Part shown: in pieces, positions 11,301 to 51,506 of the stretch
Position numbering within the stretch: position 1 is the first letter of the stretch
How the letters are laid out: the number at the start of each line of letters is the position of its first letter
Assembly (NCBI GenBank): GCA_002269645.1
Contig: NIVC01001095.1
Span: 186,001 to 250,000 of the forward strand
Reading direction: 5' to 3'
From: Macrostomum lignano
Lineage: Eukaryota
Length of the DNA: 64,000 bases
The notes under the pieces: generated by a model
Database searches by the model: none
The model's input: the letters and a program-made list of their open reading frames with translations, nothing else
What the model was told of the DNA's origin: nothing
Program-made: the position numbers and the translations under genes

Positions 11301-11548
11301 ATAGTGTTAGAGGTGTAATAGTTAGCGACCAATAAAATGAAAGACAAGTTCCAACAAAAGTAGTAAATTGCAAGTAGTAAGTTGATTTCGAAACTAGCAG
11401 TACCCGTGGCATAGCCAAATATATTTCAACTTAAAAAAACTATAAAAAAATGCTATTTCAACAAGCAGGCAAACACATGAAAATTCGAAACCAAAGAGCT
11501 GACAAAGACTTTTCTCTCGATTGTCAAGCAATTCAACTCCACTTAGAA

Positions 11549-27546: not shown

Positions 27547-30500
27547 TGCCAACGACTACCTGGTGTCTGCAGATCAACACCCAGCACTGCGTGGCGGCGT
27601 CGGTCAACCTGATGCGCACGGCAGAGCAACAGCTTCCGGGCCTGGTCTTCGTACAGGAGCCCTGGATGACTAAAGGTAAGCCAAATAATGTGCCATCTGG
27701 CTACCACTGTTTTTGCATGGCGGGCTCTCAGCCTCGCCCAAGATCTCTGGTCTTTGCTGCAAAAGCTTTTGAGGCATGGATGAGACCTGATCTCTCGACT
27801 GGGGACATCTGTGTTGTTCAAATCAATAACCTCATTCCCAATAAACCTGTGCTGGTAGCTTCTGCCTATTTCCCGGGCGATGCCCCAGTTGTCTGCGACG
27901 CGTTAGTCAACCTTACTGACTATGCTGCGTCCCATCGGTTCGAGCTGCTCATTGCAGGGGATGTGAACGCACACCACCTGCATTGGGGCAGCAAGAACAT
28001 CAATAGCAGAGGCGAGGAGCTGCTGGCCTATGTCAGCAGCACTAACCTCAACTTCTGTAACGTGGGCAATGCACCAACGTTCAATAATGGGCGGTGGGCC
28101 GAAGTCATCGACACCACCATCGCCTCACCCGGACTGCTTTCCGCAGTTACGGGCTGGCGAGTGTGGGACGAGGACTCGCTCTCGGACCACCGCTTTATCC
28201 GCTTTTGCATTGGGCCGACCAAGCAAAAGCCTAAGGTCACTTGGAGTCGGAACGTCAGAAACACCGATTGGGCCGCCTTTGGCTCGAAGCTGAGCCGCGG
28301 CCTTCGGGATCTTGACCCCCCCAGTGACCTCTCTGACTGCCAGGTGGTGGACGATCTCGCCTCCTCCCTGGGCGGGGCGATCACCACTGCCTTTGAAGCA
28401 GCCTGCCCCCTAAAGGCCTATAAAGGCAAGAAATCTGCTCCCTGGTGGAACCCAGAGCTCGGGGCCCTTCGGCGCCGAGCCAGGACCCTCCAAAGGCGAG
28501 CGCTCAAAACCAAAGACCCATCTGACAGAGAGGCCTATACCCGTGCGATCCACGAGTTTAAGGGCCAAGTCAGAAGGGCCAAGACGGCCAAGTGGCGCCA
28601 ATATTGCGAAGGGCTTGAGGGCTCTCGCCCCGTAGCCCGCGTGGTTAAGGCACTCACTAATGACCGTTTTTCTAAACTCTCTGTTGTGAAGAGACCTGAC
28701 GGCTCGGTCACAGAGAGTTCGGAAGAGACTCTAGAGCTCATGCTCAACAGTTTTTTCCCTAAATCTCCGACTCAGCAGGGCCCGCCCGACCACACAGTGG
28801 GAGGGCAAGGCCTAGCAAAGTCTATGATCACCAAAGACCGCATTATTAGAGCGGCAAGGTCCTTTAACCCGTTCAAGGCGCCTGGGCCCGACGGCATCTA
28901 CCCAGCGTTCTTGCACGAGGCGGTGAAAAACCACCGCTTCCTGGACCTGCTCTGTCGTCTCCTTCGAGCTTGTATGGAGCTGGGCTATGTACCAGTTGCA
29001 TGGAGAGAGGCCCGGGTGGTCTTTATCCCCAAGCCTGGAAAGAGCGACTACCAATCGGTGAAGGCCTTCAGGCCTATCAGCCTCACTTCTTTCTGCCTCA
29101 AGCTCCTCGAGAGACTGGTGCTTTGGCGCCTACTTTCGGTCGAGCTGAAGCGCTTCCCACTCTCGCAGAACCAGCACGCCTTCCGCGCGGGCAGGTCAAC
29201 CGAGAGTGCTCTCCATGTCATTGTTGACTTCCTGGAGAGGGCCGTTCTTGGCAGCGGCTTTGCCCTCTCGCTTTTCCTGGACATTGAGGGGGCCTTCGAC
29301 AACGTCATCTTCGAGGCCTTTTGCAGAGCCCTGGAATCCAGGGCCACGCACCCTCACCTTGTCCGGTGGATCATGTTCATGATCCGAAACCGCACTGTTG
29401 TGGCCCACCTGAGCGGCAGCTCTCTTTCGGTGCCTGTCCTGAAAGGGGGCCCCCAGGGCGGCGTTCTCACCCCCGTTCTCTGGAACATGGTCATGGATGA
29501 GTTGCTTTGCAGTGATCTCCACGACCCCATTCTCAAGGTGGGCTATGCCGATGATGTGACCGCGATATGCGCGGGCCCCTCGGTTGATACCATCAGAGAC
29601 CTTCTGCAGGGCTTTCTGGGACGAGCGGAGCGTTGGGCAGACCAATGTGGCCTTAGACTCTCAGAGTCGAAAACCACAGCAGTCATGTTTACCAACAAAC
29701 TGCTCTGGACCATTAAGCCCCTCACCCTCTATGGAAAGAATATTTCCATGGAGAAGCAGGTCCGCTGCCTGGGCCTCACTCTGGACCACAGGCTTAACTG
29801 GACTCCGCACATTCAAACTAAAGCCAAAAAAGCCCTGGCTGTACTGGCTCAGATCAGGCGCGCCGTGGGCACCACCTGGGGGCTCACCCCCAGGAAGCTG
29901 TGGTGGATTTACACTGCCATCATCCGCCCCTCGATCAGTTACGCCAGCCTCGTGTGGGCTAGCGGCCTGAGCGTCAAGAGCAACCTCGACGCTCTCTACA
30001 AAATCCAGGGCAGAGCCTGCCGCATGACTATGGGCGCTCCACCCTCTACTCCTTTTGAAGGCATGAATGCCTTCCTCTGCGCCCCTCCTTTGGATATTTA
30101 TATCAAAGGAGAGGCGGCGAAGAGCACCCGGCGTCTTCTGGATGCTGGGTGGCCTTCAAGAAAGTGCGGGCCTTTAAGAAGCGGTCGCTTATCCCGCACT
30201 CTGACCTCTGCCTCAAGGCTCTCGAGGAGTGTGGCGGGCTCAACATCCTCACGGACTCGATCCCAGCCACCCTTCTCCTGAGCCAAAGGTATAAGGTCAC
30301 CATTCAGCCTCGACACGAGGCGAGTGACAGCTGGAGCGACTCTGAAGTCCACTGTTACACTGACGGCTCTATGAGGCATGGTCTTTCAGGCTTCGGAGCT
30401 TGCGTCTTCTTCAAGGGAGAAGTGGTGTGGAGCTACTCCCAGCACACTGGGCTCAACTCCAGTGTTTTTCAGAGCGAGGTGCTTGCCATCAGCTCCTGCG

Positions 30501-31246
30501 CGGCAGAGCTGCGCCGAAGGCAGCTTAGCGGCCGGAAATTTATTTTTCACTCTGACAGCCAAGCAGCCCTTCGGGCCCTCTGCCGCAGCACCGCCAGCTC
30601 CAGGTCCGTCCTGGACTGCAACACCCAGCTCAACGGGCTTGCGCTAGGCAACCAGGTGGAGCTCAGATGGATCCCGGGCCACGCCGGCTTCCTCGGCAAC
30701 GAGCGCGCTGACCTGCTGGCCAAGGCTGGCTCCGCCGGCGCGCTATTGGGGCCGGGCCCGGGTGCCCCCATCCCCGCCTCGGTGATCAATTCCCGCGTTA
30801 AGCGCTGGGCTGACTCCGAGCATCTCCGCAGGTGGCACGACACCCGGAATTGTAGGCAATCCCGTGCTGCCGTCCCCTGTCCCTCTCCTCTCCTGCGTAG
30901 AGCCCTCCTCAGGCTCAACCGCAGAGACCTCAGAGCAGTTAGCATGGCCCTCTCCGGGCATGGCTGCTTCTCTCGCCACCGCTTCCTTCAGGGCCAAGTA
31001 GCCGAGGAGCGGTGCCCCTTCTGCCGCTCAGGCAGTGAAAACGCCGAGCATTTTATCTGCCACTGCCCGGTTTTCACCAGGGCCAGGCTTACTCACCTCG
31101 GGCCAAACCCGGTTCTCTCCGACGTTTGCAGGCCCGAGAGCATCCCACTGCTCGCCCGGTACCTCAGGGACACCGGACGAGCTGATTTCTTCCCCACCGT
31201 CGGTGAGGAGGACCGCGCTGCAGGCGAGACCGACGGGTCCCCCTGA
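27543..31246 (+). CDS. ORF2: APE endonuclease, reverse transcriptase, RNase H, CCHC finger; one frameshift near 30150
   Basis: APE: LQINTQH, VQEPW, GDVNAHH, SLSDH. RT: KAPGPDG, GGPQGGVLTPVLWN, GYADD. RNase H: CYTDGS, SEVLAI, HSDSQAAL, WIPGHAG..GNERAD. Finger: CPFC..EHFICHC. Confidence 0.95.
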
Positions 31247-32392
31247 GCGACACCACTTCAACGGAAGTCGTTGGTCGCCAGGGGCTAGCGGAATGGGCGG
31301 TCTCCTCCGCCTCCTCGCTGCATCCGCCGGACGCCCCCTGCAGCTAAGTCAAGTAAGTCAAGTCAATTTGCACAGCTGTTTTACGCATGTCTATGCTTTA
31401 AAAAGACACCTCAGACACACACAAAGACGCTTCACAAGCTGAGATATTCCCTAGCAACTGTTGTTACGACGTTTCCCAATATACCGAATACTGTATATAG
31501 TAGTTTCTTGAGAAGCTGCTACATCGTCCCACTTTGATCTTTCTGCATGAAATTTGCACAGCTGTTTTACGCATGTCTCTGCTTTAAAAAGACACCTCAG
31601 ACACACACAAAGACGCTTCACAAGCTGAGATATTCCATAGCAACTGTTGTTACGACGTTTCCCAATATACCGAATACTGTATATAGTAGTTTTTTGAGAA
31701 GCTGCTACATCGTCCCACTTTGATCTTTCTGCATGAAATTTGCACAGCTGTTTTACGCATGTCTATGCTTTAAAAAGACACCTCAGACACACACAAAGAC
31801 GCTTCACAAGCTGAGATATTCCCTAGCAACTGTTGTTACGACGTTTCCCAATATACCGAATACTGTATATAGTAGTTTCTTGAGAAGCTGCTACATCGTC
31901 CCACTTTGATCTTTCTGTATGAAATTTGCACAGCTGTTTTACGCATGTCTCTGCTTTAAAAAGACACCTCAGACACACACAAAGATGCTTCACAAGCTGA
32001 GATATTCCCTAGCAACGGTTGCCTGAAGGCATGCTCATATCTAACTTGCATTTGGACACCGGCATGGAATGTACGTTATACTTGTATTTGCCTTCTACCG
32101 ATCTGAAGCACTTTACTTTAGGCAGATCTATCAGCAATATTAACACTGTACAGGAGGCAGTTTTTCTTTATGTACATTCGTTGTCATTTTGCCATGTACA
32201 TTACGCAAGAGGCCTAACACAGAATATGCCTGCACCCTGTTTTGGTATATAATCTTTCTCACTAACAAGCTCATTTTGACAATATGGATGAATTGTCTCT
32301 GCTGACTACAATATCTCTATCTTATATTGGCAAGAGTACAATAAGCACTAGCATATTTTGGTACTTAATTCATCTGACAGTTTTTTTTCGGC

Positions 32393-35300
32393 ATGAGGTT
32401 GTCAATATGCATTTTGGCTTTGTTCCTGGTCACCATCTCAATGAGTTTCCCTACCAAGGAAGAAGTAAGCATTTTTTTGGCTTTGTGAGAGACTGACGTC
32501 TACGAATGGCTATATAGGCAAGGACCACTGTAGTGCGAGAAGAAGGACTCGGCACTCACAAACTACGGAAAAATTTTTGAAGGCTGATTTTCCACAGGCT
32601 TCGTGTCTGACTACCAGTGCGCCATTTTTGTGCAACCACATAAATTTGTGCTTTATTCATGCTTATTGCTCTGCTCATTTTTGATGCATGTTGTGCACGT
32701 AATTACATGCATACATGTAATTTTTTCTATTAATTTTTTTCAATAAATGGCTACAAGCACTAGACTTTCAAGATTTTCAAGTACGAGACACCTCGTGCAA
32801 TATGCCATAATTGCCATAAATTAATTGCCATAATTGCTTACTGAGAACCTCTCATCACAATGTATCACAGAAGAAATCAGCCGGCAGAAGTGAGCTGCAG
32901 AGATGCAAACTGATACAATATACAAAAAGCATTAGCCGTATCACTGCACTATCAGAGGACAGTACAAAAATCTTTGTAAGTGGCAAGCATCACTAAACTG
33001 GGTGGTAAGGTCAGCCAATGGCCAATGTTCTTTAAAAATTCAGCTGCTAATGTAGTAAAAAAATCATCTTAATGTCTGTATCTGAAGAGGCAGCATCAAA
33101 CTGAAAATCAGCCTTCAAAAATTTTTACGTGGTTTGTGAGTGTCGAGTCCTTTTTCTACAGTGGTCCTTGTATGTACATGTAGGTTTTGCAATGTAATTT
33201 GGAGTGCTAAATTATGGCTTATGAAGTACAGGTGTCTTGCCTGTGGTTGTCTAGAGGCCTTCAATAGGAACGCTGCCCCGGTGAAGTACAGTTGCTTGAG
33301 CTCCTCTGGGAAGTCTCCGGGTTGATCTAGTAGCGTTGGTAGTGCTGCCACCAGCTTCGCAGAGTCGCAGCCTTCGTGAGGTGCTGAGCTCGTAGAAGCA
33401 AATAACTAAGACGAGAGAAAGAGACTCGCACTTCGTGCAGATTTAGCAGTTCTCGCGCAGAGGTGCCCACCGTCAGCAGTCCCTGCCGGGCTGGTGCGGG
33501 GTGAGAGCGAAAGTGCTAGCTTCGGGCGATCTGAGCTGGCCTGCTAGCTGATAGCAGGAACAATCAGAGCCAGAGGCAGTCACGCGCAAAGTCGGGAGTC
33601 TTGGAGTTCAACTTAAGCGTCAACTTGGCACAAACTTAGAGTTCGCTAGAAACGAAACGGAAGGAACGCTAGGAAAGCTTGGAAAGCTAGGAACGCGAGG
33701 AACGGTAGGAACGCTGAAAACGCAGAAACGAGAGGCTGAAACGGAAGGGCCGGTTAACGGAAGGAAAGAAAGGCTTGTCTGAGCCAAGCCAGGAGAGGGG
33801 CTGCATTTATAGGGAGGATCGATTGCACCATAGCACGAAAGGCCCCCGCTGAGAGTCATAAGTGACTCTGTTGCTATTTTTAGCAACAAACAAGCGGGCC
33901 CTGCCTCAGAGGAGGCAAGGGGGGGTCCGGGCGCACGTGATCTCCCCATAAACACGAGCCCAGCGTACAATGATGAAATCATTGCACTTTGGACTAAAGA
34001 AGGAAGAGGGCCTTGTCATGTGACTGACTCACATGACAAGGGGAAAAGGCCCACAAGTGAAGGCACTCGTGACCGTGGGACCGGAAAACAGGAAGGCACT
34101 CCAAATTTGGAGATGCCTGACAGAGAACGAAACAGAGGCAGGCCAGACCAAGCTGTCTGGGCACTGCAAAAAGGGAAAGCGAGACAAAAGGGGCAAACGA
34201 GGACAAACAGACAGACAGACAAACGGGCAGAGGACAGGCCAGGGACAGGCGGGAGGGACAGGCAACTGCCCAGCGGCAGACAGAAACCTGGGGAGAAGGC
34301 GAGGGCAACAGCTGACTAGTGCGGCGCCTAACTAAACTAGCGACTCACTACACTCTCCCCGTTCAAATAAAGAGGCGGAGTGAAGCGGCGCGCGCTTTAT
34401 TTAAAACAAAGTAAACGTGAATTTACTGACAAAAGAAAACACACAAAATTTCAAATGCGCTCGTGAAATTGCGCGACTGGCCAGGTCGTAAAGATAGTGG
34501 CCTGATACCGCGGGGGCGCCAACCCGCTAATAGCCTGCGCCTAACTATTCCTCGTGCTCCAGCCCGCAAAATTAGTGCTCGAATTTGGTGTGGGGGCGCC
34601 GGCCCACCCTAGAAATGGCGCCTAAATATTGCGCGGGCGATACCTGAATACACAAGCCAACCGGCTTAAAATTCCTGCATAAGGGCGCTTAACTAGCGCG
34701 GCAAACGGGGCAACTTCATTGTCAACAGGGCGTACATCAGCGTACGGCCGCCAATCAGTCAAAATAGCACAGACGCGGAGTCATCAAGAGCATCGGCAGG
34801 TCTTCTTCCCCGCCGCCCATGAATCGGGCAACGCGGACGGCCGCCAGGTGGAGAGCGTACGGCCGGTTCGGCCGCTCCAGGTCGGGGCCGGCCAGGCCGA
34901 CCGCCTCCGCGAATAACCGGCTCCTCTCCTCGGCCGTGGTTTGACGGAGCTCCGCCCAGATCGGGCCACCGAGGTCAACGATTTCTCCGCCTTGCCGAGC
35001 CGCTCTGACGAGTACAGCGCTTATCAGGTTGGCGCCGGCAGCGATGACGGTAGCTCGGTATTCCGGTATTGGCGACTCCGTTTGAGTGCCGGTATCGAGC
35101 GTTTCCGCCGGACGTTCGGGCGATGGTGGCGGGGCCCTGGGCAGGGTGCGGCGCAGCGACGCGGCCAGGTCGGTCCAAACAGCTGAGGAGCATGCGGCCG
35201 CTCCCTGAGTGTCATCGGTCCAAGACATCGGAGACGGGGCCGCGTCGGGATGCCTGGCGTCGTCGAGATCCCCTCCGCGTTCATCTGTTCCGCCGGGCCT

Positions 35301-38300
35301 GCCGTGGTGCTCCGACCCGACTCGCTCACGGGCCGCCGGCCGAGCCCCGTCGATGTCTGGAAGGGAATTGCGGACTTGGAGGCGGATGTCCGCCAAGCCC
35401 CGCATCACCTGCTGTTCCAGCTGCACGTAAGCCAAAGCGGCCGCGATCCGGTCGACCATGAGTGTCCGCGCAGTCGCGTCTGGCGATGGCGAGTCGCGCG
35501 TGAGGTCGATGACTTCGGGCGAGTGTCGTTGACCCCGAGCGGGGTGTTGAGCTGCATGGCTCTCCAGAACGGGCGAAGGGCTTCGCCTGGGTGCCGATGT
35601 TCGGAGTGGCCTCCCATTCCGCCTCTGGGGCTCGGGAGACGGCGTGCGACGGTGAGGGCGCCGATCAACCTGGCGCGTCGGCCTCGCCGAGCCGTTGCCT
35701 TCAGCCCTGAGTCTCCGGTTAATTGTCTCCAGCGGGCGCCGCGGGATCCCCATGGTCTCTGGCGAGACCGGGGTACCAGGTCGGCGCCGGCTACGGCTAG
35801 GCCGCCCTTGCTCCGCATCGGACGAGGAGCTTGAGCTCACGTGGAGCGGACGCTTGTGCATTTCTGCGCTGCAAGGTTTTAATTTGTGCACACGCATGCG
35901 GGCGGTGCGACTAACGTACGTTTTGGCCCTAGGATCGCTAATCAGAAGCCTCTCCGGCGGCCTCCGATCCCTAACTGGCCTACCTACCACTACTGGTATG
36001 GGAGACGCTTCCACCTGAGTGGTGCAAGGAGGTGGCGCAGGAGACTGCACCGCCGAAAAAGGTTCGGGAAGGGGGACGCATGGACAGGTGAAAAAGAAGC
36101 AGCAGGTGCAGACGCATTCAAACCAGGCACACCATCATGGCGATCACCATACGGCAGTGGCTCACGCCGAAATGCACTTGCCTGGTTCGCTGGTGTCGTG
36201 ACCGGTCCACCTCCTGGCTGCACATCCGGGATCGCCAACGGCCGGAAGCGCCACCGGAAGGCCGGCCATGCGTCATCATCATCATCGTCCTCGTCCGGAT
36301 CGTCCTCCGGAATCGGTGTCAGAGTCGCGGGTCCTGCACCGTCCGGGGCATCAGTCAACCTGCAGCGCTTCTTGGCCTGGTCGACTTCTGGATCCGAAGT
36401 CAGCTGGTAGTCGGCATCAGGGACGAGTAGCAGATTCCGGCGATGGACTACTAGCTCGTCGCGCCTGGCCCGCGGGTTTGGCACTCTACGGCGAATCTTG
36501 TAGACGACCTCGCCCTTGGGTTCGACTACCTCGTACAGCGCTTTGCGAGGTCGATGGAACTTCGCCGCTTCATCCGGTTCGAGCACCGGGTTGTTGAGGA
36601 AAACCAGGTCACCAGGTTGGAGCTTCTTGGCAGCGGGCAGGTTCGAATAGTGCTCGTCGCGCAGTTGCTGATGCAGATGCAGGCGTTCTTTGGCTAGCTC
36701 AGTCGCTTCGTCCAAACGGCGCTGGAAGTCCTTGACATAGTCAGGCAGATTGGCATACTCCGGCAGCTTCTTGATCGCGTTGTCGATTGGTAGTCGAAAG
36801 TCTCGACCAAACACCAGGTAGTGAGGCGTGAAACCTGTCACCGGGTGTACACTAGAGCGGAGCGCCATCAAGCAGGCTGGGAGGAAGGTGTCCCAGTCGT
36901 TATGGTTGCGCTCGAGGAGGCAGGTGAGGACACTCTTCAGCTGCTTGTTGAGGTTCTCGACTTGCCCATTAGAAGCTGGGTTGTACGGTGTTGTCGTCGT
37001 ATGCCGGATGCCAAACAGGTCGCAGAACTTCTTGAAAGCTGAGCCAGTGAAATTGGTTCCTTGATCAGTGTGTATCCAGCATGGTACACCAAAGTCAGGG
37101 ATCAAGCGCTCCTGCAGGATCTTGATGACCGTCTTGGCTTTCTGGTTCCTCATCGGATAGGCGAACGGGTACTTCGACGTCGCGTCGCATAGCGTCAAGA
37201 TGTAGCGGTTCCCGCTCTTGCTCTTCTGGGCGATAGGGCCTACTACATCGCAATGTACTCTTCCCAGGACTTCGCACACAGGGAAGCTCTGTACAGGTAC
37301 TCGGTCTCGTCTTCGGGATTTACTTTCAAGACAGGCGCGGCACTTACTGATAAAGTTCTCGGTGACACGGGCTAGTCCGGGCCTCCAGAATCGTTCACGT
37401 AGCCGCTTCAACGTCTTCGTCTGGCCGAGGTGTCCACACAGTGGCGAACTGTGGAGCTCCTGGAGCACCTGGGCATCTAGAGCTTCGGCAGGACAACCTT
37501 CGGGGCTGCTGGCCATCAGTCAGATCGATCATCAGCAGGCCGTTGTCCTCTCGCAGATTATCATAATATCCGAGCAGATTCCGCTGCTCCTTCGTCAGTC
37601 GCAACCGGGCGTCGAACTCAGGCTTCAGGGCTTTGTTCTCGACCAAGTTGAGCACGTAGCTGATTGCTCGGTCGGCGCGCTGCGCGTCGACAAACTGTTG
37701 CCGCGTCATCGGCATCCTCAGAAAATCAGTGAGCACGGCGCGGCATGGCTGAGGGTTCCGGATTTCCTCAGTCTCCGCTTCTGTGGCTCGCAGTTGATCA
37801 CGCGACTCCGTCTTGTCGGCGTCAGGATTAGGTCGCTCCGAGGGACTTTGTCTCACAACGTCGGCGTACGATCGCTGATCTCGTTTCGAAGTTCTCATCG
37901 TCGCTCTCTTGACAGGAATTTCCGCAGCTGGAGCAGTGCACTTGCCTCCACTGCACAGCCCAGGCGACTCTTGGCTGTAGGGCGAGACGCAACACGTGAA
38001 GCACGCCTCGTCGCAGGCAGCCGTAGCCGTCGGCTCGATCATCGTCGTCATTGGGTGAGTCTTCTCCAGCACTGGGCGGTGTCGCAAAGGGGGACTCGAC
38101 TTTCCGCACAGGCGATGAGCAGCTGTCTGTCGGCTCGGGGGACAGAGCGTTGACCTTGCAGCCGTCGCGAGAGTCTGGCCTCTGTCAACACGGCGAGAAC
38201 TCTCAGCGCAAAACTCCGGGGAGTTGAACTTACATTGCTGGTCTGGATTCGCGTTGTGGGCTGTCATCAGAAGGGCTGCTTGTTCAGTGGCCTCTGAGTC

Positions 38301-41300
38301 GTGGTCCATGGGCGTCTCCAGATTCCGAGACCCGCAGTCTTGGACATCATCAAGGAGGTCTACGTCAGCAGTGGCCTCCGAGGTTTTGTCCGGGCGAATC
38401 TCCAAGTAACGGCAGTCGGCGTGGGCGTCGCTGCGGAGGGCTGAGGTGTCAGTGGCCTCCGGGTTGGTGTCCAAACCGGTCTCCAGGCGTTGACTGCAGC
38501 GATGGTCGTCGTGCTGAAGGACTGCTGGCGCAGTGGCCTCCAGGTCTTCGGCCAGGGCAGTTTCGGCCTCCTTGTTGCGAGTGTGGACCTTCTTCGTGCG
38601 GGCTGCTCTCGCAGTGGCCTCACGTGTGGTGTCCAATTCCGGCTCCAGGCTGGTGTCATCACCGGGTCGGGCTGCAGAACCGGGGTGCTCCAGCAGTCGG
38701 CCATGTTCGAAGTCAACCGGTGGTGTCTCCGGGCGTCTTGACAGGGCGTCAGCGTTGGCGTGGTCCTTGCCTTTGCGATGGTGAAGCTGGAAGCGGAACT
38801 CGCTTAATCGCTCAATCCAACGGCCCAAGATGCCTGTGACCTGCGTCTGGTTCAGCAGCCACAGCAAGGCCCGATGGTCAGAACGAACTTCAAACTTCTT
38901 GCCGATTAAATAATGACGGAAATGTCGCATCGCGTCCACGATTGCAAGCAGCTCTTTCTTCGTGACCGTGTAGCGCTTCTCAGGATCACGAAGCTTCCGG
39001 CTAAAGAATGCAATTGGGCGCTCGACGCCGTCGGATTGCCGTTGTCCAAGACAAGCGCCTATGCGAATGTCTGAGGCATCCGTGTCTAGGACAAACTTCA
39101 CATTAGGATCTGAGTTAAACTCAGGCAGAGCGAGAACTTCAGTCGAACACAACTTCTTCTTCAACGTGTCGAACGCTACCTGGTGCTCATCAGTCCAATG
39201 CTGCCGCAGGCTGCCGATGTCCTTTCGAGTCAGGGCATGTAGCGGCGCAGCAAATCCAGCGTAGCCGTTGACAAACTTGTGGTAGTAATTGGCGAGGCCT
39301 AGGAATTGTCTCAGTTGAGTAACGGACTGTGGCACGGGCCAATCACGGATCTGCGCAATCTTGTCCTCACAGGTCTTCAGGCCGTCGGGAGTCACGACGT
39401 GGCCTAGATAATGCAGCTCCTTGAGGAACAAATGGCACTTCTTCGGCTTGACCTTGAGGTTGGCTGCGATAATCCGCTGGAGTACAGTCCGCAGGTTGTC
39501 CAGCTGCTCCTCGAAGGTCACAGAGTGCACCACGATGTCATCCATGTAGCCAAGCGCAGTCTTTGGCGTCAGGCCGTCCAGGAGCTTATTGATGCAACGC
39601 TGAAAGCTGCCTGGACTATCGTGGAGACCCATCGGTAGAACATTGAAACAGAATTGTCCGCGGTCAATCACAGAGAACGCCGTCAGGTGCTGATCGCAGT
39701 CGCGCAGCGGGATCTGCCAGAATCCTTGAGCGAGATCCAAGCTAGAGTACCACTGGGCACCACGCAGCTTCGCGAAGGTCTCCTGAATGTGCGGCAGCGG
39801 GTACGGGTGGTACACACACTTGTCGTTGAGAGCTCTGAAGTCATGCACCAGCCTGATGTTGCCGTCCTTCTTGGGCACTATCAGCATTGGCGAGTTGTAG
39901 CTAGAATAAGCCGGGCGAATGATGTGCTTCGCCAGCATCTCGTCTAGCAGGGCGTCTAGCTTGTCCTTCAGATGAGGCGGGATCCTGCGCGGTGGTAGCG
40001 CAACTGGTGTCCGATCCTTCAGGATGATCTCGTGGGTCACCAAGTGTGTCAGGCCAGCGTCTAGCAGATGCTTCGAGAAGGCTGCTTGACACTCAACTAG
40101 TAGATCTCGCACTCTCTGTCGTTGATCTTCGGACAGCTCGCTGTTGATCTCGACTTCCTCTAGCCAAGCTGTGCTGGACTCTTCAGGGCTCCTTGGCAAA
40201 TGTCGCACTTCAGGTTCCGGCGTCTCTTCCAGGTACATCAGGTCGGCAGTTCTAAGTGGTGTCGCAACCCAACGCGGATGCCCGACTGCAGGAACACCTC
40301 GCAGTCAGCAGTGTTGACGACCTCGATGTAGCCTCGACCTTCAGGCATCGTCATCAGAGCTGGAGCTGCTTCCAGAGTGTTGCAGCTGGGGTGCAGTCTC
40401 GACTTCACCAGCTCGACGATTGATGGCGATCCTCGGTTCTCGGGGTGGCCGACATCCAACTGGACGGCCAACAGCGCTGAGCTTCTCGGCGGCAGAGTGC
40501 ACTTCTCGGAGGTGTACACCCGGCATGATTGAAGCTCACGGCGCGAATAGCGAACGGGAATGCACGCGCCATTGTTGAACTTTAACATTCCTTGCGCAAA
40601 GTCCAAGTTTGGCAGTGTTCACGCATGAAATTAATACCAAGCAAATTTTCACAATCGGTGACCGTGACCAGGAATTCGGTGTCCGCGACGACATCACCAA
40701 CTCCACCGGGATGATCACCTTACACGCAAGGGGTAGCTGCGTACCGTCGTACATGGTCACGCAATCCGGGATAGCATGCGATATGATACAACGAGGCATC
40801 CGACGTCTAACATTGGCCCAGGTCGACGCTCCAAGAAAGTTTTTCCGACTGCCGCTGTCTAGTAGGAAAGGGACTTCTCGGCCCGCCAATCGGCCGGTGA
40901 CGTACGGATCAGCCTCACGCGCATGGATTTTTTGATCATCGGAGGTGTCCACGAAACCTCCGCACTCAGCCTCACTTACTGATGAGCGACTGTCGGACTG
41001 GGCATTGGCGTCTGCGCAGCCGACATCCTCTTCTTCTGGTGAGCGTTCGGAGTCTGCCAAGTAGCCGGGGCTTGGGCTCTGCGGAGGGCGTTGCCGTGGG
41101 CGCTCTCCGTCTCGCCGTTTCCCTGGTTCTGGCGTAACGGGCACTGTGCATTGCGATGACCAGGCTGACCACAGCCATAGCAGATCATGGCTTTCGCCGG
41201 CGGACTCGTTTTCTGCTGCTGGTCACGCTGCACCAGGTTGTCTAGCAGTCGCTGCTGTTTCTCTAGCAGATCAGTCAGAGCTAGGAGAGCTTGAGCGGTG

Positions 41301-43987
41301 GCGTCGGGCGTCGGGTCACCGTCGCGCTCCCCGTTCAGCATGCGAACCGGGGGTTGAGCAGAGCGCTGCGCCAGTTCCTTGGCGCCTTCCAGACGATGGA
41401 GTTCTCGAATAGCGGCCAGCAGATTGTTCGGGCGGACCCAATAGAGCCGCTCGCGCAGATCTGGTGTCGTCCTGATGCCAGCTAGGAACTGATCAGCCAG
41501 CTCCCGCTCTCGATCCTCAGGGTGCATTCGAGGGTACGCTCGCTCTCCCAAGGTGCGCAGGGCATCAGCGTACTCTTCTGCTGACTCATTCTTGCCTTGC
41601 TGACGGCGCCTCAGCAGCTCTCGATATTCATCCGCGCCACCGTGGCGGGCGAATCTCTCGATCAGTCGCTGCCTGACCTCCTCGTAGCCAGCATAGCGTG
41701 GGAGGTGCATACTGAGCAGAGCCGGGTAAGCGGTTGCCAGATCTAGACTCGCAACGAGGTGCTGCTTCATCTCGATCGGGTCTTCGATACGCTCCATCTC
41801 GCAGCGCTGCTCGAACGCGGCGAGCCAGACGTGGATGTCCTGGCTGGGCGTGTACTTTACAATCTTAACAGATTTGCTTACCGGCCGCTCCATCTGCTGC
41901 TGCAGAGCTGCCATCATCGTTCTCACATCCTGGGGCCTGATGTTCTGGCCGAGGTCGTCCAAACCTGGCAGAAGCTCGTCTGGCGGGTCTTCGGACACTT
42001 CGCTTCTCGCACTTCGCCGCGGCATCTGCTGACCAAGGTCGTTGACCGCTGCTGCTGCGGCAGCCGATGCTGCTGCAGGTCTCGAACTGCTGATGTGCTG
42101 ATCCAGCCGGCTGCTGCACCGGCTCTCTTCTCTCTCGTTAAACATTTCAAATTAGTAGAATAGCCGAATTCTTACTCGAAAGAGCGGTTGTCTTGGGTGT
42201 AGTAGTAGTCGAATCTTGACTTGTCGGATCCCAGATAGTCGTGTCGTTGACTCGTCGAATCCCACCGCTGCCACCAGTGAAGTACAGGTGTCTTGCCTGT
42301 GGTTGTCTAGAGGCCTTCAATAGGAACGCTGCCCCGGTGAAGTACAGTTGCTTGAGCTCCTCTGGGAAGTCTCCGGGTTGATCTAGTAGCGTTGGTAGTG
42401 CTGCCACCAGCTTCGCAGAGTCGCAGCCTTCGTGAGGTGCTGAGCTCGTAGAAGCAAATAACTAAGACGAGAGAAAGAGACTCGCACTTCGTGCAGATTT
42501 AGCAGTTCTCGCGCAGAGGTGCCCACCGTCAGCAGTCCCTGCCGGGCTGGTGCGGGGTGAGAGCGAAAGTGCTAGCTTCGGGCGATCTGAGCTGGCCTGC
42601 TAGCTGATAGCAGGAACAATCAGAGCCAGAGGCAGTCACGCGCAAAGTCGGGAGTCTTGGAGTTCAACTTAAGCGTCAACTTGGCACACAACTTAGAGTT
42701 CGCTAGAAACGAAACGGAAGGAACGCTAGGAAAGCTTGGAAAGCTAGGAACGCGAGGAACGGTAGGAACGCTGAAAACGCAGAAACGAGAGGCTGAAACG
42801 GAAGGGCCGGTTAACGGAAGGAAAGAAAGGCTTGTCTGAGCCAAGCCAGGAGAGGGGCTGCATTTATAGGGAGGATCGATTGCACCATAGCACGAAAGGC
42901 CCCCGCTGAGAGTCATAAGTGACTCTGTTGCTATTTTTAGCAACAAACAAGCGGGCCCTGCCTCAGAGGAGGCAAGGGGGGGTCCGGGCGCACGTGATCT
43001 CCCCATAAACACGAGCCCAGCGTACAATGATGAAATCATTGCACTTTGGACTAAAGAAGGAAGAGGGCCTTGTCATGTGACTGACTCACATGACAAGGGG
43101 AAAAGGCCCACAAGTGAAGGCACTCGTGACCGTGGGACCGGAAAACAGGAAGGCACTCCAAATTTGGAGATGCCTGACAGAGAACGAAACAGAGGCAGGC
43201 CAGACCAAGCTGTCTGGGCACTGCAAAAAGGGAAAGCGAGACAAAAGGGGCAAACGAGGACAAACAGACAGACAGACAAACGGGCAGAGGACAGGCCAGG
43301 GACAGGCGGGAGGGACAGGCAACTGCCCAGCGGCAGACAGAAACCTGGGGAGAAGGCGAGGGCAACAGCTGACTAGTGCGGCGCCTAACTAAACTAGCGA
43401 CTCACTACACTTACTACTGTTGACTTACTTCCCAGATCGACGATGCCGTCTCTCGGGCAAGGAAGGCGCACTCCATTCCTAAAGATTACCGAAATCGAGA
43501 TCCTATTTTCTCGTTTTTATGCTCGCGACTGGGAATGAGAAATAACTTAAGAAATCGTATGACTATGTGGAATTGGCTTCGGAAAGCCACATCTACATGT
43601 AGTACCCGATGTTCGCCCGGACAACCTCCTCATGAAGATGAGTCTTGTTTCCAACAGAACAGCAATTCTTTTAGACCTCATAGCTCCACTGAATATCAGC
43701 CAACCAGTGGCCATGCTGAAGCCCAGCCAGCAGCTGGCCAGGCGACCAACAATGAGAGAGCCGGAAGTCCTGAAGGGACTCCTGAAGGGACTCCTGAAGG
43801 GACTCCTGAAGGGACTCTTGAAGGGACTCCTGAAGGGCAACTTGTTATGGACTGCTCCTCAAGGAATGAAGTGACAGCGACAGTGACAATATCGATTAAC
43901 GCTATAAGGAAGATTAATTTACGAATCAATAATTCCAAGTATGTTTTTTCGAAGCCAGCACTAAATGAAGCTCTCTGCAAATCATAA
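32393..43987 (+). CDS. Predicted 3-exon gene for a ~242-aa secreted protein inside the foldback element (32393-32464, 32871-32975, 43436-43987)
   Basis: Exon 1 encodes MRLSICILALFLVTISMSFPTKEE (signal-peptide-like) followed by GTAAGC. Exon 2 (cacAG..GTAAGT, 105 nt) is open only in frame 0. Exon 3 follows tgacttacttcccAG in phase 0 and runs into ORF 43535..43987. AATAAA at 44004. No recognised homology. Confidence 0.62.
33222..34352 (-). repeat. 3' LTR (1131 bp)
   Basis: Near-identical to 42278-43409; TATAAA on the minus strand at 33806-33811; preceded by PPT GAACGGGGAGAG. Confidence 0.97.
34755..36050 (-). CDS. Post-integrase ORF (431 aa), probably a frameshifted C-terminal extension of Pol
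   Basis: Overlaps the end of the integrase ORF and begins with RPVRDRRPPERL, a typical Gypsy integrase tail motif. No signal peptide or TM segment. Confidence 0.65.
   Translation of the reverse strand: MQSPAPPPCTTQVEASPIPVVVGRPVRDRRPPERLLISDPRAKTYVSRTARMRVHKLKPCSAEMHKRPLHVSSSSSSDAEQGRPSRSRRRPGTPVSPETMGIPRRPLETINRRLRAEGNGSARPTRQVDRRPHRRTPSPEPQRRNGRPLRTSAPRRSPSPVLESHAAQHPARGQRHSPEVIDLTRDSPSPDATARTLMVDRIAAALAYVQLEQQVMRGLADIRLQVRNSLPDIDGARPAARERVGSEHHGRPGGTDERGGDLDDARHPDAAPSPMSWTDDTQGAAACSSAVWTDLAASLRRTLPRAPPPSPERPAETLDTGTQTESPIPEYRATVIAAGANLISAVLVRAARQGGEIVDLGGPIWAELRQTTAEERSRLFAEAVGLAGPDLERPNRPYALHLAAVRVARFMGGGEEDLPMLLMTPRLCYFD
35990..37516 (-). CDS. Integrase portion of Pol
   Basis: HHCC (HSSPLCGH..CRAC); DDE (VHCDVVGP, HTDQGTNF, NGQVENLN). 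Confidence 0.95.
   Translation of the reverse strand: MASSPEGCPAEALDAQVLQELHSSPLCGHLGQTKTLKRLRERFWRPGLARVTENFISKCRACLESKSRRRDRVPVQSFPVCEVLGRVHCDVVGPIAQKSKSGNRYILTLCDATSKYPFAYPMRNQKAKTVIKILQERLIPDFGVPCWIHTDQGTNFTGSAFKKFCDLFGIRHTTTTPYNPASNGQVENLNKQLKSVLTCLLERNHNDWDTFLPACLMALRSSVHPVTGFTPHYLVFGRDFRLPIDNAIKKLPEYANLPDYVKDFQRRLDEATELAKERLHLHQQLRDEHYSNLPAAKKLQPGDLVFLNNPVLEPDEAAKFHRPRKALYEVVEPKGEVVYKIRRRVPNPRARRDELVVHRRNLLLVPDADYQLTSDPEVDQAKKRCRLTDAPDGAGPATLTPIPEDDPDEDDDDDDAWPAFRWRFRPLAIPDVQPGGGPVTTPANQASAFRREPLPYGDRHDGVPGLNASAPAASFSPVHASPFPNLFRRCSLLRHLLAPLRWKRLPYQ
37395..40238 (-). CDS. Reverse transcriptase-RNase H portion of Pol with a long acidic spacer
   Basis: PYPLPHI, LDLAQGFWQI, LPMGL, YMDDIVV, LDTDASD, TKKELLAI, RSDHRAL, NADALSR. 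Confidence 0.95.
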   Translation of the reverse strand: MYLEETPEPEVRHLPRSPEESSTAWLEEVEINSELSEDQRQRVRDLLVECQAAFSKHLLDAGLTHLVTHEIILKDRTPVALPPRRIPPHLKDKLDALLDEMLAKHIIRPAYSSYNSPMLIVPKKDGNIRLVHDFRALNDKCVYHPYPLPHIQETFAKLRGAQWYSSLDLAQGFWQIPLRDCDQHLTAFSVIDRGQFCFNVLPMGLHDSPGSFQRCINKLLDGLTPKTALGYMDDIVVHSVTFEEQLDNLRTVLQRIIAANLKVKPKKCHLFLKELHYLGHVVTPDGLKTCEDKIAQIRDWPVPQSVTQLRQFLGLANYYHKFVNGYAGFAAPLHALTRKDIGSLRQHWTDEHQVAFDTLKKKLCSTEVLALPEFNSDPNVKFVLDTDASDIRIGACLGQRQSDGVERPIAFFSRKLRDPEKRYTVTKKELLAIVDAMRHFRHYLIGKKFEVRSDHRALLWLLNQTQVTGILGRWIERLSEFRFQLHHRKGKDHANADALSRRPETPPVDFEHGRLLEHPGSAARPGDDTSLEPELDTTREATARAARTKKVHTRNKEAETALAEDLEATAPAVLQHDDHRCSQRLETGLDTNPEATDTSALRSDAHADCRYLEIRPDKTSEATADVDLLDDVQDCGSRNLETPMDHDSEATEQAALLMTAHNANPDQQCKFNSPEFCAESSRRVDRGQTLATAARSTLCPPSRQTAAHRLCGKSSPPLRHRPVLEKTHPMTTMIEPTATAACDEACFTCCVSPYSQESPGLCSGGKCTAPAAEIPVKRATMRTSKRDQRSYADVVRQSPSERPNPDADKTESRDQLRATEAETEEIRNPQPCRAVLTDFLRMPMTRQQFVDAQRADRAISYVLNLVENKALKPEFDARLRLTKEQRNLLGYYDNLREDNGLLMIDLTDGQQPRRLSCRSSRCPGAPGAPQFATVWTPRPDEDVEAAT
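40238..41144 (-). CDS. Aspartic protease and linker of Pol, split by frame breaks (ORFs 40536..41144 and 40238..40606)
   Basis: VPFLLDSGS catalytic motif; ENLLGINFM flap-like motif in the intervening frame. Confidence 0.85.
40976..42145 (-). CDS. Gag (389 aa) with CCHC zinc knuckle
   Basis: CYGCGQPGHRNAQC; retrotransposon capsid-like region (RRQQGKNESAEEYADALR). Confidence 0.92.
   Translation of the reverse strand: MFNEREESRCSSRLDQHISSSRPAAASAAAAAAVNDLGQQMPRRSARSEVSEDPPDELLPGLDDLGQNIRPQDVRTMMAALQQQMERPVSKSVKIVKYTPSQDIHVWLAAFEQRCEMERIEDPIEMKQHLVASLDLATAYPALLSMHLPRYAGYEEVRQRLIERFARHGGADEYRELLRRRQQGKNESAEEYADALRTLGERAYPRMHPEDRERELADQFLAGIRTTPDLRERLYWVRPNNLLAAIRELHRLEGAKELAQRSAQPPVRMLNGERDGDPTPDATAQALLALTDLLEKQQRLLDNLVQRDQQQKTSPPAKAMICYGCGQPGHRNAQCPLRQNQGNGETESAHGNALRRAQAPATWQTPNAHQKKRMSAAQTPMPSPTVAHQ
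42255..42276 (-). other. Primer-binding site complementary to the 3' end of tRNA-Leu
   Basis: The plus strand reads tcgaatcccaccgctgccacca, the conserved 3' end of metazoan tRNA-Leu(AAG/TAG) plus CCA, 1 nt from the 5' LTR. Confidence 0.9.
42278..43409 (-). repeat. 5' LTR (1132 bp)
   Basis: The only difference from the 3' LTR seen by eye is a 1-bp indel (ggcacacaac vs ggcacaaac). Confidence 0.97.
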
Positions 43988-44184
43988 AATGCTGACTGTG
44001 TTGAATAAAGACAGGGACAATGCAGTTATCGCGGATCAAGTCGGACGTGATATTTATGGGGTGTTTTATGTTTCGTTGCACGAAATGTTTTGATGCTTAT
44101 TTTCTGTAGTTTGATTCTCAGTTGCTGACGGGATTACCCCATCCTGAGTCGATAACATTAATTCTGTTCGATTTTACTAATGTG

Positions 44185-44743
44185 CACTGTGCACTAATTT
44201 CATGCAGAAAGACCAAAGTGGGACGATGTAGCGGCTTCTCAAAAAACTACTATATACAGTATTCGGTATATTGGGAAACGTCGTAACAACAGTTGCTAGG
44301 GAATATCTCAGCTTGTGAAGCGTCTTTGTGTGTGTCTGAGGTGTCTTTTTAAAGCAGAGACATGCGTAAAACAGCTGTGCAAATTTCATGCAGAAAGATC
44401 AAAGTGGGACGATGTAGCAGCTTCTCAAAAAACTACTATATACAGTATTCGGTATATTGGGAAACGTCGTAACAACAGTTGCTATGGAATATCTCAGCTT
44501 GTGAAGCGTCTTTGTGTGTGTCTGAGGTGTCTTTTTAAAGCAGAGACATGCGTAAAACAGCTGTGCAAATTTCATGCAGAAAGATCAAAGTGGGACGATG
44601 TAGCAGCTTCTCAAAAAACTACTATATACAGTATTCGGTATATTGGGAAACGTCGTAACAACAGTTGCTAGGGAATATCTCAGCTTGTGAAGCGTCTTTG
44701 TGTGTGTCTGAGGTGTCTTTTTAAAGCAGAGACATGCGTAAAA
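44185..44743 (-). repeat. Right TIR 186-bp subrepeat array (3 copies, inverted)
   Basis: Unit ends at 44371, 44557 and 44743; reverse complement of the left array. Confidence 0.95.
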
Positions 44744-46280
44744 GTTTCTATAAATTCACAGTATCTTGCGTAATAAATAGACAATTTTGTTAAACATTTA
44801 ATGAACGATTTCTGAATGTCTGTCTGAATGTCTGTCGGGAAACCAATACATTTTGATAAGACACGTTTTGATAAGCAACATGCCGCGACTGCACTGCAAG
44901 TAACAGAGGCTACGGCAATGAATTTGATGAATTTCTTCTTTCGATGAAAGAAAGAAAGAAAAAAGTTTTTGAAAGTTATAACACAGTTAGTTGTTATACT
45001 ATAAGTTAACTATGTAAAAAATAAAAATTTGGTTGTCAAAATAAGTCATTTTGTTTTATAATATAATTTTTAGCTAAAAACTAAATATTATTATTATTTA
45101 CAGCGACATGATTTGGTTTCTTCATTTTTATGCATTTTAAATAATTAATGCTTTTATATACCGTGCATGCTACAGCGTAAAGTATGTAACTTGTAGTTAC
45201 ACAATATTAAGTTTATAAACTTCTACAGTTCTACTGTAGTACATGTAACGAGAAGCAATAAACTTTCTGAAATATATAATCTTACTATATGTGCCCTAAT
45301 CCTATTCAACAAAACTTGCTTTGCTTCACTGAGTACTGAGTAGCTGAGTAGCTATAATTTACAGGGGCGGCCCCAAAAATAGCTTGATAAAACATATTGC
45401 GACCCACTAAAACCTAAGTTTGCACACTTTAAGACTTTAAGCTTGATTTTTCGCCCCCCCCCTCCTACACGCATTTTTGCACCCTAGCTTAAAAATTGGC
45501 GCCCCTCATACTTATGTTGGCGCCCCAAACTATGACCGCCTTTCCCCAATTGAAATTCTAGATCCGCGTGTTCCGCCACTGGCTAGAATGACGAAGTGCA
45601 AAGGGCCTAACTCAGCTCATTAAGTACAGTTTATTTAGATTTATTTTAATCATTTTCAACCGCTATGGAAACGTTATAAAGACATTTTTATTTACAGTCT
45701 GTTAAACAGGTTTGATGTGTTGAAATGTACAACTGTTAGCTTTTTTCAGCTCTATACAAAATTCGCTTTATTTAGTTAGTACTTTTTATAATTTTTATGT
45801 ACATGTTTCACTTTGCAATAACTCAATTCAAAATTCAAAAATTCAATTCAATTCTAAAATTTTTTTTAAAAATCGCACGAAGGGCTATTGCAGTTCCAAA
45901 GTTAATTTTGTAAGCCATAAAATTTAAACTATACAATAGTTATATCACAGATTTTGGTGCAATTGTCCTTGTTGTCTGATATGAATTAAAAATGGAAAGA
46001 AGCAAAGTCGTGTAAGTTGAAATTAAAGTGTGCAAGGTTAAAAGAGTTTGAAAGGAGCATTAAGTGAGTGAAAATTTGATTCCTTATTTCTTTATGGGGT
46101 TTAAAATTTTATATTGTTATCATAGCTAGATTTCTCAAAAATTTGGAAATATAACTTATTGAAATACGAGTACTTTGTACTTTCAAAATAAAAAGAAACT
46201 CTTTAATGAGATATTCACTGCCCTCTGTCTGGCATGTTTTTATTCTTCAGTTATAAATTTTTCGACAGGCTGGCCTAGCT

Positions 46281-51410: not shown

Positions 51411-51506
51411 TACGAGATGTAAATATAGTATGTAGAACATGTCTTGTACCAGAGCATGAGCTACGTGTATATAGTGAGCTCTGCACCAGCTACGAGATGT
51501 ACTGCA

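What the first reader, a model, noticed from the sequence alone, without database searches (positions are those of the whole stretch)
32393..44009. Hidden three-exon gene for an orphan secreted protein, split by a 10-kb retrotransposon
It does not appear as a whole in the ORF track. The predicted product is MRLSICILALFLVTISMSFPTKEE / KKSAGRSELQRCKLIQYTKSISRITALSEDSTKIF / IDDAVSRARKAHSIPKDYRNRDPIFSFLCSRLGMRNNLRNRMTMWNWLRKATSTC..(PEGT)5..CKS. Support: a signal-peptide-like start, consensus GTAAG donors, all phase-0 junctions, exon 2 open in only the required frame, several Cys, dibasic sites, and AATAAA just after the stop. A secreted factor spreading through a DNA transposon would be a new route to gene-family expansion (for example mucus, reproductive or signalling proteins).
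Basis: partly seen in the sequence, partly recalled or inferred. Interest (0 to 1): 0.82.

Follow-up and report, generated by a model that had tools for sequence, protein, structure and literature searches.

The report
Foldback-like transposon carrying gene-like cargo
In the flatworm Macrostomum lignano, a 3.6-kb non-autonomous DNA transposon carries a small unit that looks like a secreted-protein gene and has since been hit by two retrotransposons; the anatomy is solid, but the gene is unproven and transposon-borne genes of this kind are already known in animals.

Summary
The window is Macrostomum lignano contig NIVC01001095.1.

The putative gene lies inside a cut-and-paste DNA transposon at 25267-44851. 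It has a perfect 9-bp target duplication (TTTGATAAG) and 665-937-nt inverted ends built from 186-nt tandem units. The homeologous locus has an empty site, so this is a real insertion.

The element encodes no transposase. It holds two young nested insertions:
- a LINE (25563-31364) in the left inverted end
- a complete Ty3/Gypsy element (33222-43409, LTRs identical apart from a 1-nt indel) in the proposed intron 2, 22 nt upstream of the exon 3 acceptor

For the gene:
- The 187-codon exon 3 ORF is longer than chance predicts (p about 0.002).
- Exon 1 is the only strict signal-peptide-plus-donor ORF in 128 kb.
- The splice motifs fit the species.
- AATAAA follows the stop.

Against the gene:
- It has no homolog among 1.84 billion protein representatives.
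- GC3 is 0.39, against 0.64-0.80 for every known coding region in the window.
- No confident fold is predicted.
- Exon 2 is not significant and sits inside an inverted-repeat unit.

Expression and sibling copies could not be tested here. The closest precedent is Drosophila Ssk-FB4, so this is a new member of a known kind.

The parts
25258..25266 (.). Left copy of the 9-bp target-site duplication TTTGATAAG of the DNA transposon
   Evidence: The homeolog L003 has one copy at the empty site.
25267..25562 (+). Outer part of the left terminal inverted repeat: a 108-nt unique terminus (ATGTATTGGTTTCCC...) plus the first 186-nt unit
   Evidence: One mismatch in 296 nt against the reverse complement of 44556-44851. 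The terminal 24-mer occurs only at the two ends.
25563..31364 (+). Nested full-length LINE. ORF1 is 25831-27546, ORF2 with endonuclease and RT is 27543-30281, and an RNase H ORF is 30149-31246. The 3' tail is (AAGTC)n. The 16-bp TSD AATTTGCACAGCTGTT lies at 25547-25562 and 31365-31380.
31365..32021 (+). Inner part of the left inverted repeat: 3.5 tandem units of 186 nt
   Evidence: 97-99% identical to the right arm
32246..32251 (+). TATATA motif 147 nt upstream of the proposed ATG. Upstream ATGs at 32284 and 32288 lie between it and the start.
32393..32464 (+). Proposed exon 1: 24 codons, signal-peptide-like, donor GTAAGC
32500..33183 (.). MITE-like unit bounded by inverted repeats that encloses exon 2. 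The arms are about 32500-32600 and 33095-33183, with a core 74-nt match at 86%. No clear target duplication.
   Evidence: (I7)
32871..32975 (+). Proposed exon 2: 35 codons, acceptor CACAG, donor GTAAGT. Weakly supported.
33222..43409 (-). Nested complete Ty3/Gypsy LTR retrotransposon. The LTRs are 33222-34352 and 42278-43409, identical except for one 1-nt indel. Ends are TG..CA and the TSD CTTA lies at 33218-33221 and 43410-43413. It has a tRNA-complementary primer binding site and a polypurine tract. ORFs: gag 40976-42145, protease-like 40536-41144, RT/RNase H 37395-40238, integrase 35990-37516, and an unassigned 431-aa ORF at 34755-36050.
43436..43987 (+). Proposed exon 3: 183 codons plus stop, acceptor TTCCCAG, with a 12-nt PEGT repeat at 43768-43837. 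It is the largest ORF of the cleaned element.
44004..44009 (+). AATAAA, 17 nt after the stop codon
44187..44851 (-). Right terminal inverted repeat: 3.0 units of 186 nt plus the 108-nt terminus
44852..44860 (.). Right copy of the 9-bp target-site duplication TTTGATAAG

Best explanation
The locus is a nested pile of mobile elements in an intergenic region of Macrostomum lignano, between a FAM76 gene and two TMEM17-family genes.

The base element is a roughly 3.6-kb non-autonomous cut-and-paste DNA transposon of Foldback/Mutator-like build. It has a 9-bp target duplication and 665-937-nt inverted ends, each made of a 108-nt terminus plus 186-nt tandem units. It has no transposase of its own. It must have been moved in trans by a transposase encoded elsewhere (inferred), after the homeologous chromosome copies diverged (shown by the empty site).

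Its 2-kb unique core is laid out as one compact transcription unit:
- a TATA-like motif
- a signal-peptide exon
- one intron of 779 nt before the Gypsy insertion, which may or may not contain a 105-nt cassette exon
- a 183-codon terminal exon
- AATAAA

I read this core as a genuine gene-derived cargo, that is, a Pack-TIR-like element. If expressed, it would give a 207- or 242-aa secreted, Cys-containing, largely disordered orphan protein.

Later a LINE landed in the left inverted end. A Gypsy element landed antisense in the intron, 22 nt upstream of the exon 3 acceptor, stretching that intron to 10.5 kb. In this particular copy the cargo is therefore probably poorly expressed or not expressed at all (inferred).

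Shown: element boundaries, target duplications, empty site, nesting order, ORF statistics and orphan status. Inferred: transcription, splicing, secretion and spread of the cargo with the element.
For: Source and context:
- The window is M. lignano Mlig_3_7 contig NIVC01001095.1.
- The flanking genes are FAM76 and TMEM17-family genes.

Transposon:
- Inverted ends and 186-nt arrays.
- Exact ends and 9-bp duplication.
- The homeolog L003 matches the flanks at 89-93% and carries a single TTTGATAAG with no element.
- The cleaned element has no transposase, and the exon 3 ORF is its largest ORF.

Nested elements:
- LINE domains and 16-bp TSD.
- Gypsy domains, identical LTRs, CTTA TSD, primer binding site and polypurine tract.

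Gene-likeness:
- ORF length p about 0.002.
- Exon 1 is the unique strict signal-peptide-plus-donor ORF in 128 kb.
- Both donors fit the species donor motif GT[GA]AG and both acceptors fit CAG (PMC8629364).
- The acceptor sits 4 codons after the last in-frame stop and lies outside the LTR and its TSD.
- AATAAA is 17 nt after the stop.
- The whole unit fits between the inner edges of the inverted ends.

Precedent: FB4 has 9-10-bp TSDs and about 700-bp TIRs, is non-autonomous, and carries the expressed Ssk gene (PMC8277862).
Against: - No homolog outside the PEGT low-complexity stretch in 5.8 billion clustered proteins or 1.84 billion representatives read exhaustively. Both collections include GenBank and UniProt M. 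lignano proteins.
- No Pfam or PDB match.
- No parent gene was found, so capture is not demonstrated.
- Exon 3 has GC3 0.39. The four host and four TE coding regions in the window have 0.64-0.80. Its codon log-odds under a small host model is the worst of its six frames.
- AlphaFold2 without an alignment gives mean pLDDT 39.
- Three other frames across exon 3 are open for about 100 codons.
- A 70-codon upstream ORF starting at 32284 overlaps the proposed start.
- Exon 2 is not significant and lies inside an inverted-repeat unit.
- No gene is called here in the public annotation. That annotation deliberately dropped transcripts overlapping repeats (PMC5730564), so this absence says little.
Confidence: 0.55

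Rival explanations
1. The transposon anatomy is as described, but the core is plain non-coding filler. On this reading the 187-codon ORF, the signal-like ATG ORF and the splice-like motifs are coincidences, picked out by a reader searching 64 kb for gene-like patterns.
For: - Orphan status at every depth searched.
- GC3 and codon usage unlike all real coding sequence in the window.
- Several other frames open across the same stretch.
- No confident fold.
- An upstream overlapping ORF.
- Exon 2 is explainable by chance.
- GTRAG occurs 6 times in the intron, so donor-like motifs are common there.
Against: The coincidences would have to coincide: ORF p about 0.002, the only strict signal-peptide/donor ORF in 128 kb lying 1 kb upstream on the same strand and in phase, an acceptor at the very start of the ORF, and AATAAA 17 nt after the stop.
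Confidence: 0.25
2. The cargo is a decayed, transduplicated fragment of a host gene, a Pack-MULE-style pseudogene. It keeps gene-like signals only because the capture and this insertion are young.
For: - Most Pack-TIRs and Pack-MULEs are fragments (PMC8277862).
- The two inverted ends differ by 1 in 296 nt and the TSD is perfect, so an intact ORF need not imply selection.
- The mature protein has an odd number of Cys (7).
Against: - No parent or paralog is detectable among annotated M. lignano proteins in the databases.
- The unit looks complete from start codon to poly(A) signal, not truncated.
Confidence: 0.12
3. Only the exon 3 ORF is used. The M. lignano spliced leader, which ends in ATG, is trans-spliced onto the 43435/43436 acceptor and supplies an in-frame start. 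That would give a 184-aa non-secreted protein, and exons 1 and 2 would be irrelevant.
For: - The spliced leader is CGGTCTCTTACTGCGAAGACTCAATTTATTGCATG, and about 30% of genes are trans-spliced (PMC8629364).
- The acceptor is phase 0, so ATG|ATC GAC reads in frame.
Against: - The acceptor TCCCAG does not match the enriched trans-splice motif [T/C]TNCAG exactly.
- An upstream cis donor in phase exists, and such a donor normally favours cis-splicing (text).
- This model does not explain the signal-peptide exon.
Confidence: 0.06

Closest known systems
Drosophila FB4 / Ssk-FB4 (Foldback element acting as a Pack-MULE/Pack-TIR; Tan et al. 2021, PMC8277862)
   Same: - Non-autonomous element with 9-10-bp target duplications and roughly 700-bp inverted ends.
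- Carries an intron-containing gene between the ends.
- The insertion is polymorphic or young.
- The idea that the cargo spreads with the element.
   Different: - For Ssk-FB4 the parent gene (Ssk) is known, and transcription, translation and positive selection were demonstrated. Here no parent or paralog was found and nothing is known about expression.
- The subrepeat unit here is 186 nt.
- The host is a flatworm, and no flatworm is mentioned in that survey's text.
- This copy is broken up by a LINE and a Gypsy element.
Tm1 Mutator/Foldback family of root-knot nematodes, with the Cg-1 gene inside an element (Gross and Williamson 2011, PMC3169594)
   Same: - The family is defined by composite inverted ends of variable length, like Foldback elements, and by 9-bp target duplications.
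- Non-autonomous members exist.
- A gene lies within a member.
   Different: - Tm1 has an identified Phantom/Mutator-type transposase partner. No partner could be searched for here.
- No sequence similarity was tested or claimed.
Plant Pack-MULEs
   Same: Long inverted ends, a 9-bp target duplication, and a non-transposase sequence carried between the ends.
   Different: - Pack-MULEs are defined by cargo with an identifiable host parent, usually fragments. Here the cargo has no detectable parent.
- The cargo here looks like one complete small gene.
Galileo and other P-superfamily foldback-like elements
   Same: Very long inverted ends containing tandem repeats.
   Different: To my knowledge Galileo makes 7-bp target duplications. 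Here the duplication is 9 bp.

Membership tests
Class II TIR (cut-and-paste) DNA transposon | Terminal inverted repeats | tested here: met
   The outer 296 nt of the two ends differ at 1 position. The arrays are 97-99% identical.
Class II TIR (cut-and-paste) DNA transposon | Target-site duplication and an empty site at an orthologous or homeologous locus | tested here: met
   TTTGATAAG flanks both ends. There is a single copy and no element in L003.
Class II TIR (cut-and-paste) DNA transposon | Encoded transposase (autonomous member) | tested here: not met
   The cleaned 3.6-kb element has no ORF with a transposase match. It is therefore non-autonomous.
Foldback / Mutator-like (MULE) superfamily | 9-10-bp target duplication | tested here: met
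   Exactly 9 bp. FB4 has 9-10 bp (PMC8277862) and Tm1 has 9 bp (PMC3169594).
Foldback / Mutator-like (MULE) superfamily | Long composite inverted ends built of tandem subrepeats | tested here: met
   665 and 937 nt, made of 186-nt units, with unequal copy number in the two arms.
Foldback / Mutator-like (MULE) superfamily | Mobilised by a Mutator/Phantom-type transposase; termini shared with an autonomous partner | not testable with these tools
   The rest of the M. lignano genome cannot be searched by DNA here. Merlin (8-9-bp TSD) is not excluded.
Pack-MULE / Pack-TIR (gene capture) | Internal sequence derived from an identifiable host parental locus | tested here: not met
   There is no protein-level parent in the databases, which include annotated M. 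lignano proteins. A DNA-level search of the genome was not possible.
Protein-coding gene for a secreted protein | N-terminal signal peptide | tested here: inconclusive
   A heuristic passes: n-region MR, 13-residue hydrophobic core, and a small-residue cleavage site SMS|FP. SignalP is not available.
Protein-coding gene for a secreted protein | Spliced, polyadenylated transcript | not testable with these tools
   No RNA-seq access. The splice motifs fit the species consensus. The exact products are not in the protein collection.
Protein-coding gene for a secreted protein | Host-like codon usage or coding periodicity | tested here: not met
   GC3 is 0.39 against 0.64-0.80. The codon log-odds is -0.28 per codon, the worst of six frames. 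The training set is small, at 826 codons.
Protein-coding gene for a secreted protein | Conservation or purifying selection among copies or species | not testable with these tools
   No sibling copy could be retrieved.
Ty3/Gypsy LTR retrotransposon (the interrupting element) | LTRs with TG..CA ends, a short TSD, primer binding site and polypurine tract, and domain order RT - RNase H - integrase | tested here: met
Non-LTR (LINE) retrotransposon (in the left inverted end) | Endonuclease plus RT ORF2, no LTRs, variable TSD, 3' simple-repeat tail | tested here: met
   It also has an RNase H domain.

The most novel reading that the evidence does not exclude
An orphan secreted-protein gene that exists only as transposon cargo. 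On this reading it arose inside a Foldback-like element, or was adopted whole by one. It is then carried complete with its own promoter, intron and poly(A) signal, and is being amplified as a young gene family in Macrostomum lignano with no static parental locus.
Probability: 0.12. Interest if true: 0.6.

Novelty: new member of a known kind. Interest (0 to 1): 0.33.

Why it matters
If the cargo proves to be expressed and present in many copies, it would be a second animal example, after Drosophila Ssk-FB4, of a Foldback-type transposon multiplying a complete protein-coding gene. It would also be the first in a flatworm and the first with an orphan secreted product, which bears on how lineage-specific secreted proteins arise.

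As it stands, the practical value is in annotation:
- It defines a previously unclassified M. lignano DNA transposon family by exact ends, TSD and empty site.
- It shows that the public annotation's rule of dropping transcripts that overlap repeats can hide such units.

Tried and rejected
1. Does the LTR supply the exon 3 acceptor? No. The LTR ends at 43409, the TSD is 43410-43413, and the acceptor AG is at 43434-43435.

2. Is exon 3 a remnant of a transposase or other TE protein? No Pfam hit even at E <= 10, and no non-repeat hit in 1.84 billion representatives.

3. I tried to fish sibling copies by searching the protein collection with the ORF that runs through the 186-nt arrays. Nothing was found.

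4. An exact-word scan of metagenome contigs with the 24-nt terminus found nothing. This was expected for a flatworm.

5. A second Mlig_3_7 contig carries TMEM17a/b proteins identical to those in the window (two accessions). It could show an allele without the retrotransposons. The look-up tool collapses it with the window's own contig. Reconstructed FAM76 products are not on record. A protein search with the FAM76 exon returned nothing (unexplained).

6. AlphaFold2 on the single sequence gave pLDDT 39. I did not run a fold search because it would be meaningless at that confidence.

7. Rfam found no RNA family anywhere in the window.

8. Exact products of 242, 207 and 150 aa are not in the 15-billion-protein collection.

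9. The inverted-repeat unit around exon 2 could not be shown to be a mobile MITE. It has no clear TSD and no second copy in the window or in L003.

Full report
**Source.** A single-exon ORF in the window (48699-49136) is on record in GenBank assembly GCA_002269645.1, contig NIVC01001095.1. That accession series is the Macrostomum lignano Mlig_3_7 genome (PMC5730564). Contig position equals window position plus 186000.

- Both donors are GTAAG. The acceptors are CACAG and CCCAG. These fit the species' enriched cis-splice motifs GT[G/A]AG and CAG (PMC8629364).
- The product is 242 aa with 8 Cys. It carries a PEGT-type repeat encoded by a 12-nt tandem repeat.
- AATAAA lies 17 nt after the stop.

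**The interruption is a complete Ty3/Gypsy retrotransposon on the minus strand, at 33222-43409.**
- Its LTRs (1131 nt after trimming 2 chance-matching bases) show no mismatch over the 1133 aligned positions and differ by a single 1-nt indel. They begin with TG and end with CA.
- It is flanked by a 4-bp duplication, CTTA.
- It has a tRNA-complementary primer binding site and a polypurine tract.
- It has a gag ORF with a weak zinc-knuckle match (E 0.0014, below Pfam's cutoff), a weak protease match, and RT/RNase H and integrase ORFs in that order.
- It also has a 431-aa ORF with no family match.
- The insertion point is 22 nt upstream of the exon 3 acceptor, so the acceptor is not LTR sequence. 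Before the insertion, intron 2 would have been 268 nt.

**The larger structure.**
- The proposed gene sits between two long inverted arms made of 186-nt tandem units.
- Self-comparison showed that the right arm continues to 44851 and that its outer 296 nt reappear inverted at 25267-25562. The left arm has therefore been split by another insertion.
- That insertion (25563-31364) is a full-length LINE with endonuclease, RT and RNase H domains, an (AAGTC)n tail and a perfect 16-bp target duplication.
- The base element thus runs from 25267 to 44851 and is flanked by a perfect 9-bp duplication, TTTGATAAG.
- With both retrotransposons removed it is about 3.6 kb. It consists of inverted ends of 937 and 665 nt and a 1973-nt unique core.
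- It contains no transposase. Its longest ORF is the 187-codon ORF that holds exon 3.

**Proof of insertion.**
- A paralogous TMEM17-family protein led to the homeologous locus L003 on contig NIVC01001585.1.
- L003 aligns to the window on both sides of the element at 89-93% identity. It contains a single TTTGATAAG followed directly by the right-flank sequence, with no element.
- The element is therefore a true transposon insertion, younger than the homeolog split. It is older than the LINE and Gypsy insertions, both of which look very recent.
- It lies in the intergenic region between a FAM76 gene on the minus strand and TMEM17a on the plus strand.

**Is the cargo a gene? Points in favour.**
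- The exon 3 ORF is reached by only 0.1-0.3% of dinucleotide shuffles of its own region.
- Under strict rules, exon 1 is the only ATG-started signal-peptide-like ORF in 128 kb of both strands that ends in phase at a GTRAG donor. Under relaxed rules it is one of five.
- The exon 3 acceptor sits 4 codons after the last in-frame stop.
- A TATA-like motif, the exons and the poly(A) signal all fit within the core.
- I judge the conjunction of these features very unlikely to be pure chance.

**Is the cargo a gene? Points against.**
- The product matches nothing outside its PEGT repeat in a word-indexed search of 5.8 billion proteins or in an exhaustive HMMER search of 1.84 billion representatives. 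It also has no Pfam or PDB match.
- Those collections contain both GenBank and UniProt M. lignano proteins, so no annotated paralog or parent exists.
- Exon 3 has GC3 of 0.39. All eight known coding regions in the window, four host and four TE, have 0.64-0.80. A small host codon model scores the proposed frame worst of the six.
- AlphaFold2 without an alignment gives pLDDT 39.
- A 70-codon upstream ORF overlaps the proposed start.
- No gene is called over exon 3 in the public annotation. The GenBank annotation excluded transcripts overlapping repeats, so this absence is uninformative.

**Exon 2 is the weakest part.**
- An in-frame open CAG..GTRAG cassette turns up in 12% of shuffled introns, and the real intron offers several alternatives.
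- Exon 2 lies inside a roughly 680-nt unit bounded by 75-100-nt inverted repeats.
- Exon 1 joined directly to exon 3 is also in frame.
- If the inverted-repeat unit is a nested MITE, the original gene would have had two exons and an intron of about 100-130 nt.
- A further reading is that the M. lignano spliced leader, which ends in ATG, is trans-spliced onto the exon 3 acceptor. That would also be in frame.

**Comparison with what is known.**
- The build matches Foldback-type elements: a 9-bp duplication, long composite inverted ends made of tandem subrepeats with unequal copy number, and no transposase.
- Drosophila FB4 has 9-10-bp duplications and roughly 700-bp ends, and is non-autonomous. 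As Ssk-FB4 it carries an intron-containing gene that is transcribed, translated and under positive selection. The same study reports 370 Pack-TIRs in 100 animal genomes (PMC8277862).
- The nematode Tm1 Mutator/Foldback family is defined by the same two features and has a gene, Cg-1, inside a member (PMC3169594).
- Gene carriage by a DNA transposon is therefore not a new route.
- Membership in the Mutator superfamily cannot be shown without the transposase partner. Merlin, with 8-9-bp duplications, is not excluded.
- The Pack-TIR definition requires a known parental locus, and that is not met at the protein level.

**Verdict.**
- The gene reading is plausible. I put about 0.55 on the core being a genuine gene-derived unit, and less on this interrupted copy still being expressed.
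- Expression, copy number and selection could not be tested with the tools available.
- This is a new member of a known kind, of moderate interest.

Noticed in passing
L003:4286-4650 (homeolog, NIVC01001585.1); corresponds to window ~25126: The homeologous locus has its own insertion of about 360 nt, AT-rich with internal inverted symmetry and MITE-like. It is absent from the window, so each homeolog has gained different small elements near the same spot.
   Followed up: no
window 46257-47725 and 48699-49136: Two tandem TMEM17-family (Pfam Transmemb_17) genes lie just right of the element. Identical proteins occur on a second Mlig_3_7 contig (two GenBank accessions for one sequence), and diverged copies occur on the homeolog. 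This is consistent with the known redundancy and hidden polyploidy of this assembly.
   Followed up: partly
window 54348-58223 (also 51281-52258, 59474-60307, 60517-61108, 10819-11335, 74-568): Large minisatellite arrays are open in several frames on both strands, giving ORFs of up to 1186 codons of pure repeat. GC skew is strong (-0.37 to -0.58) in 54-58 kb and 18-20 kb. These are mechanical ORFs, not genes.
   Followed up: no
window 34755-36050 (minus strand): The Gypsy element has a 431-aa ORF downstream of integrase with no Pfam match even at E <= 10. It could be an env-like or accessory ORF.
   Followed up: partly
window 27543-31246: The LINE's RNase H domain is in a separate 365-aa ORF overlapping the end of the 912-aa endonuclease/RT ORF (30149-30281). 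This is either a frameshift or a programmed overlap. The element ends in an (AAGTC)n tail rather than poly(A).
   Followed up: no
window 19753-21566 (minus strand): A two-exon FAM76 gene model gives 445 aa with donor at 21056 and acceptor at 20580. A protein search with its first exon returned nothing and the reconstructed products are not on record, although a 439-aa gene is called at the homeologous position. This is unexplained.
   Followed up: partly
window 61506-62672 and 5800-6195: There is a 388-codon multi-pass membrane-protein-like ORF with no Pfam hit, and a ChaC-like exon (Pfam ChaC, E 9e-11). Both are probably host genes.
   Followed up: no
window 32465-33221: GTRAG donor-like motifs occur 6 times in the 779-nt pre-insertion intron, against 1.3 expected from shuffles.
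   Followed up: no
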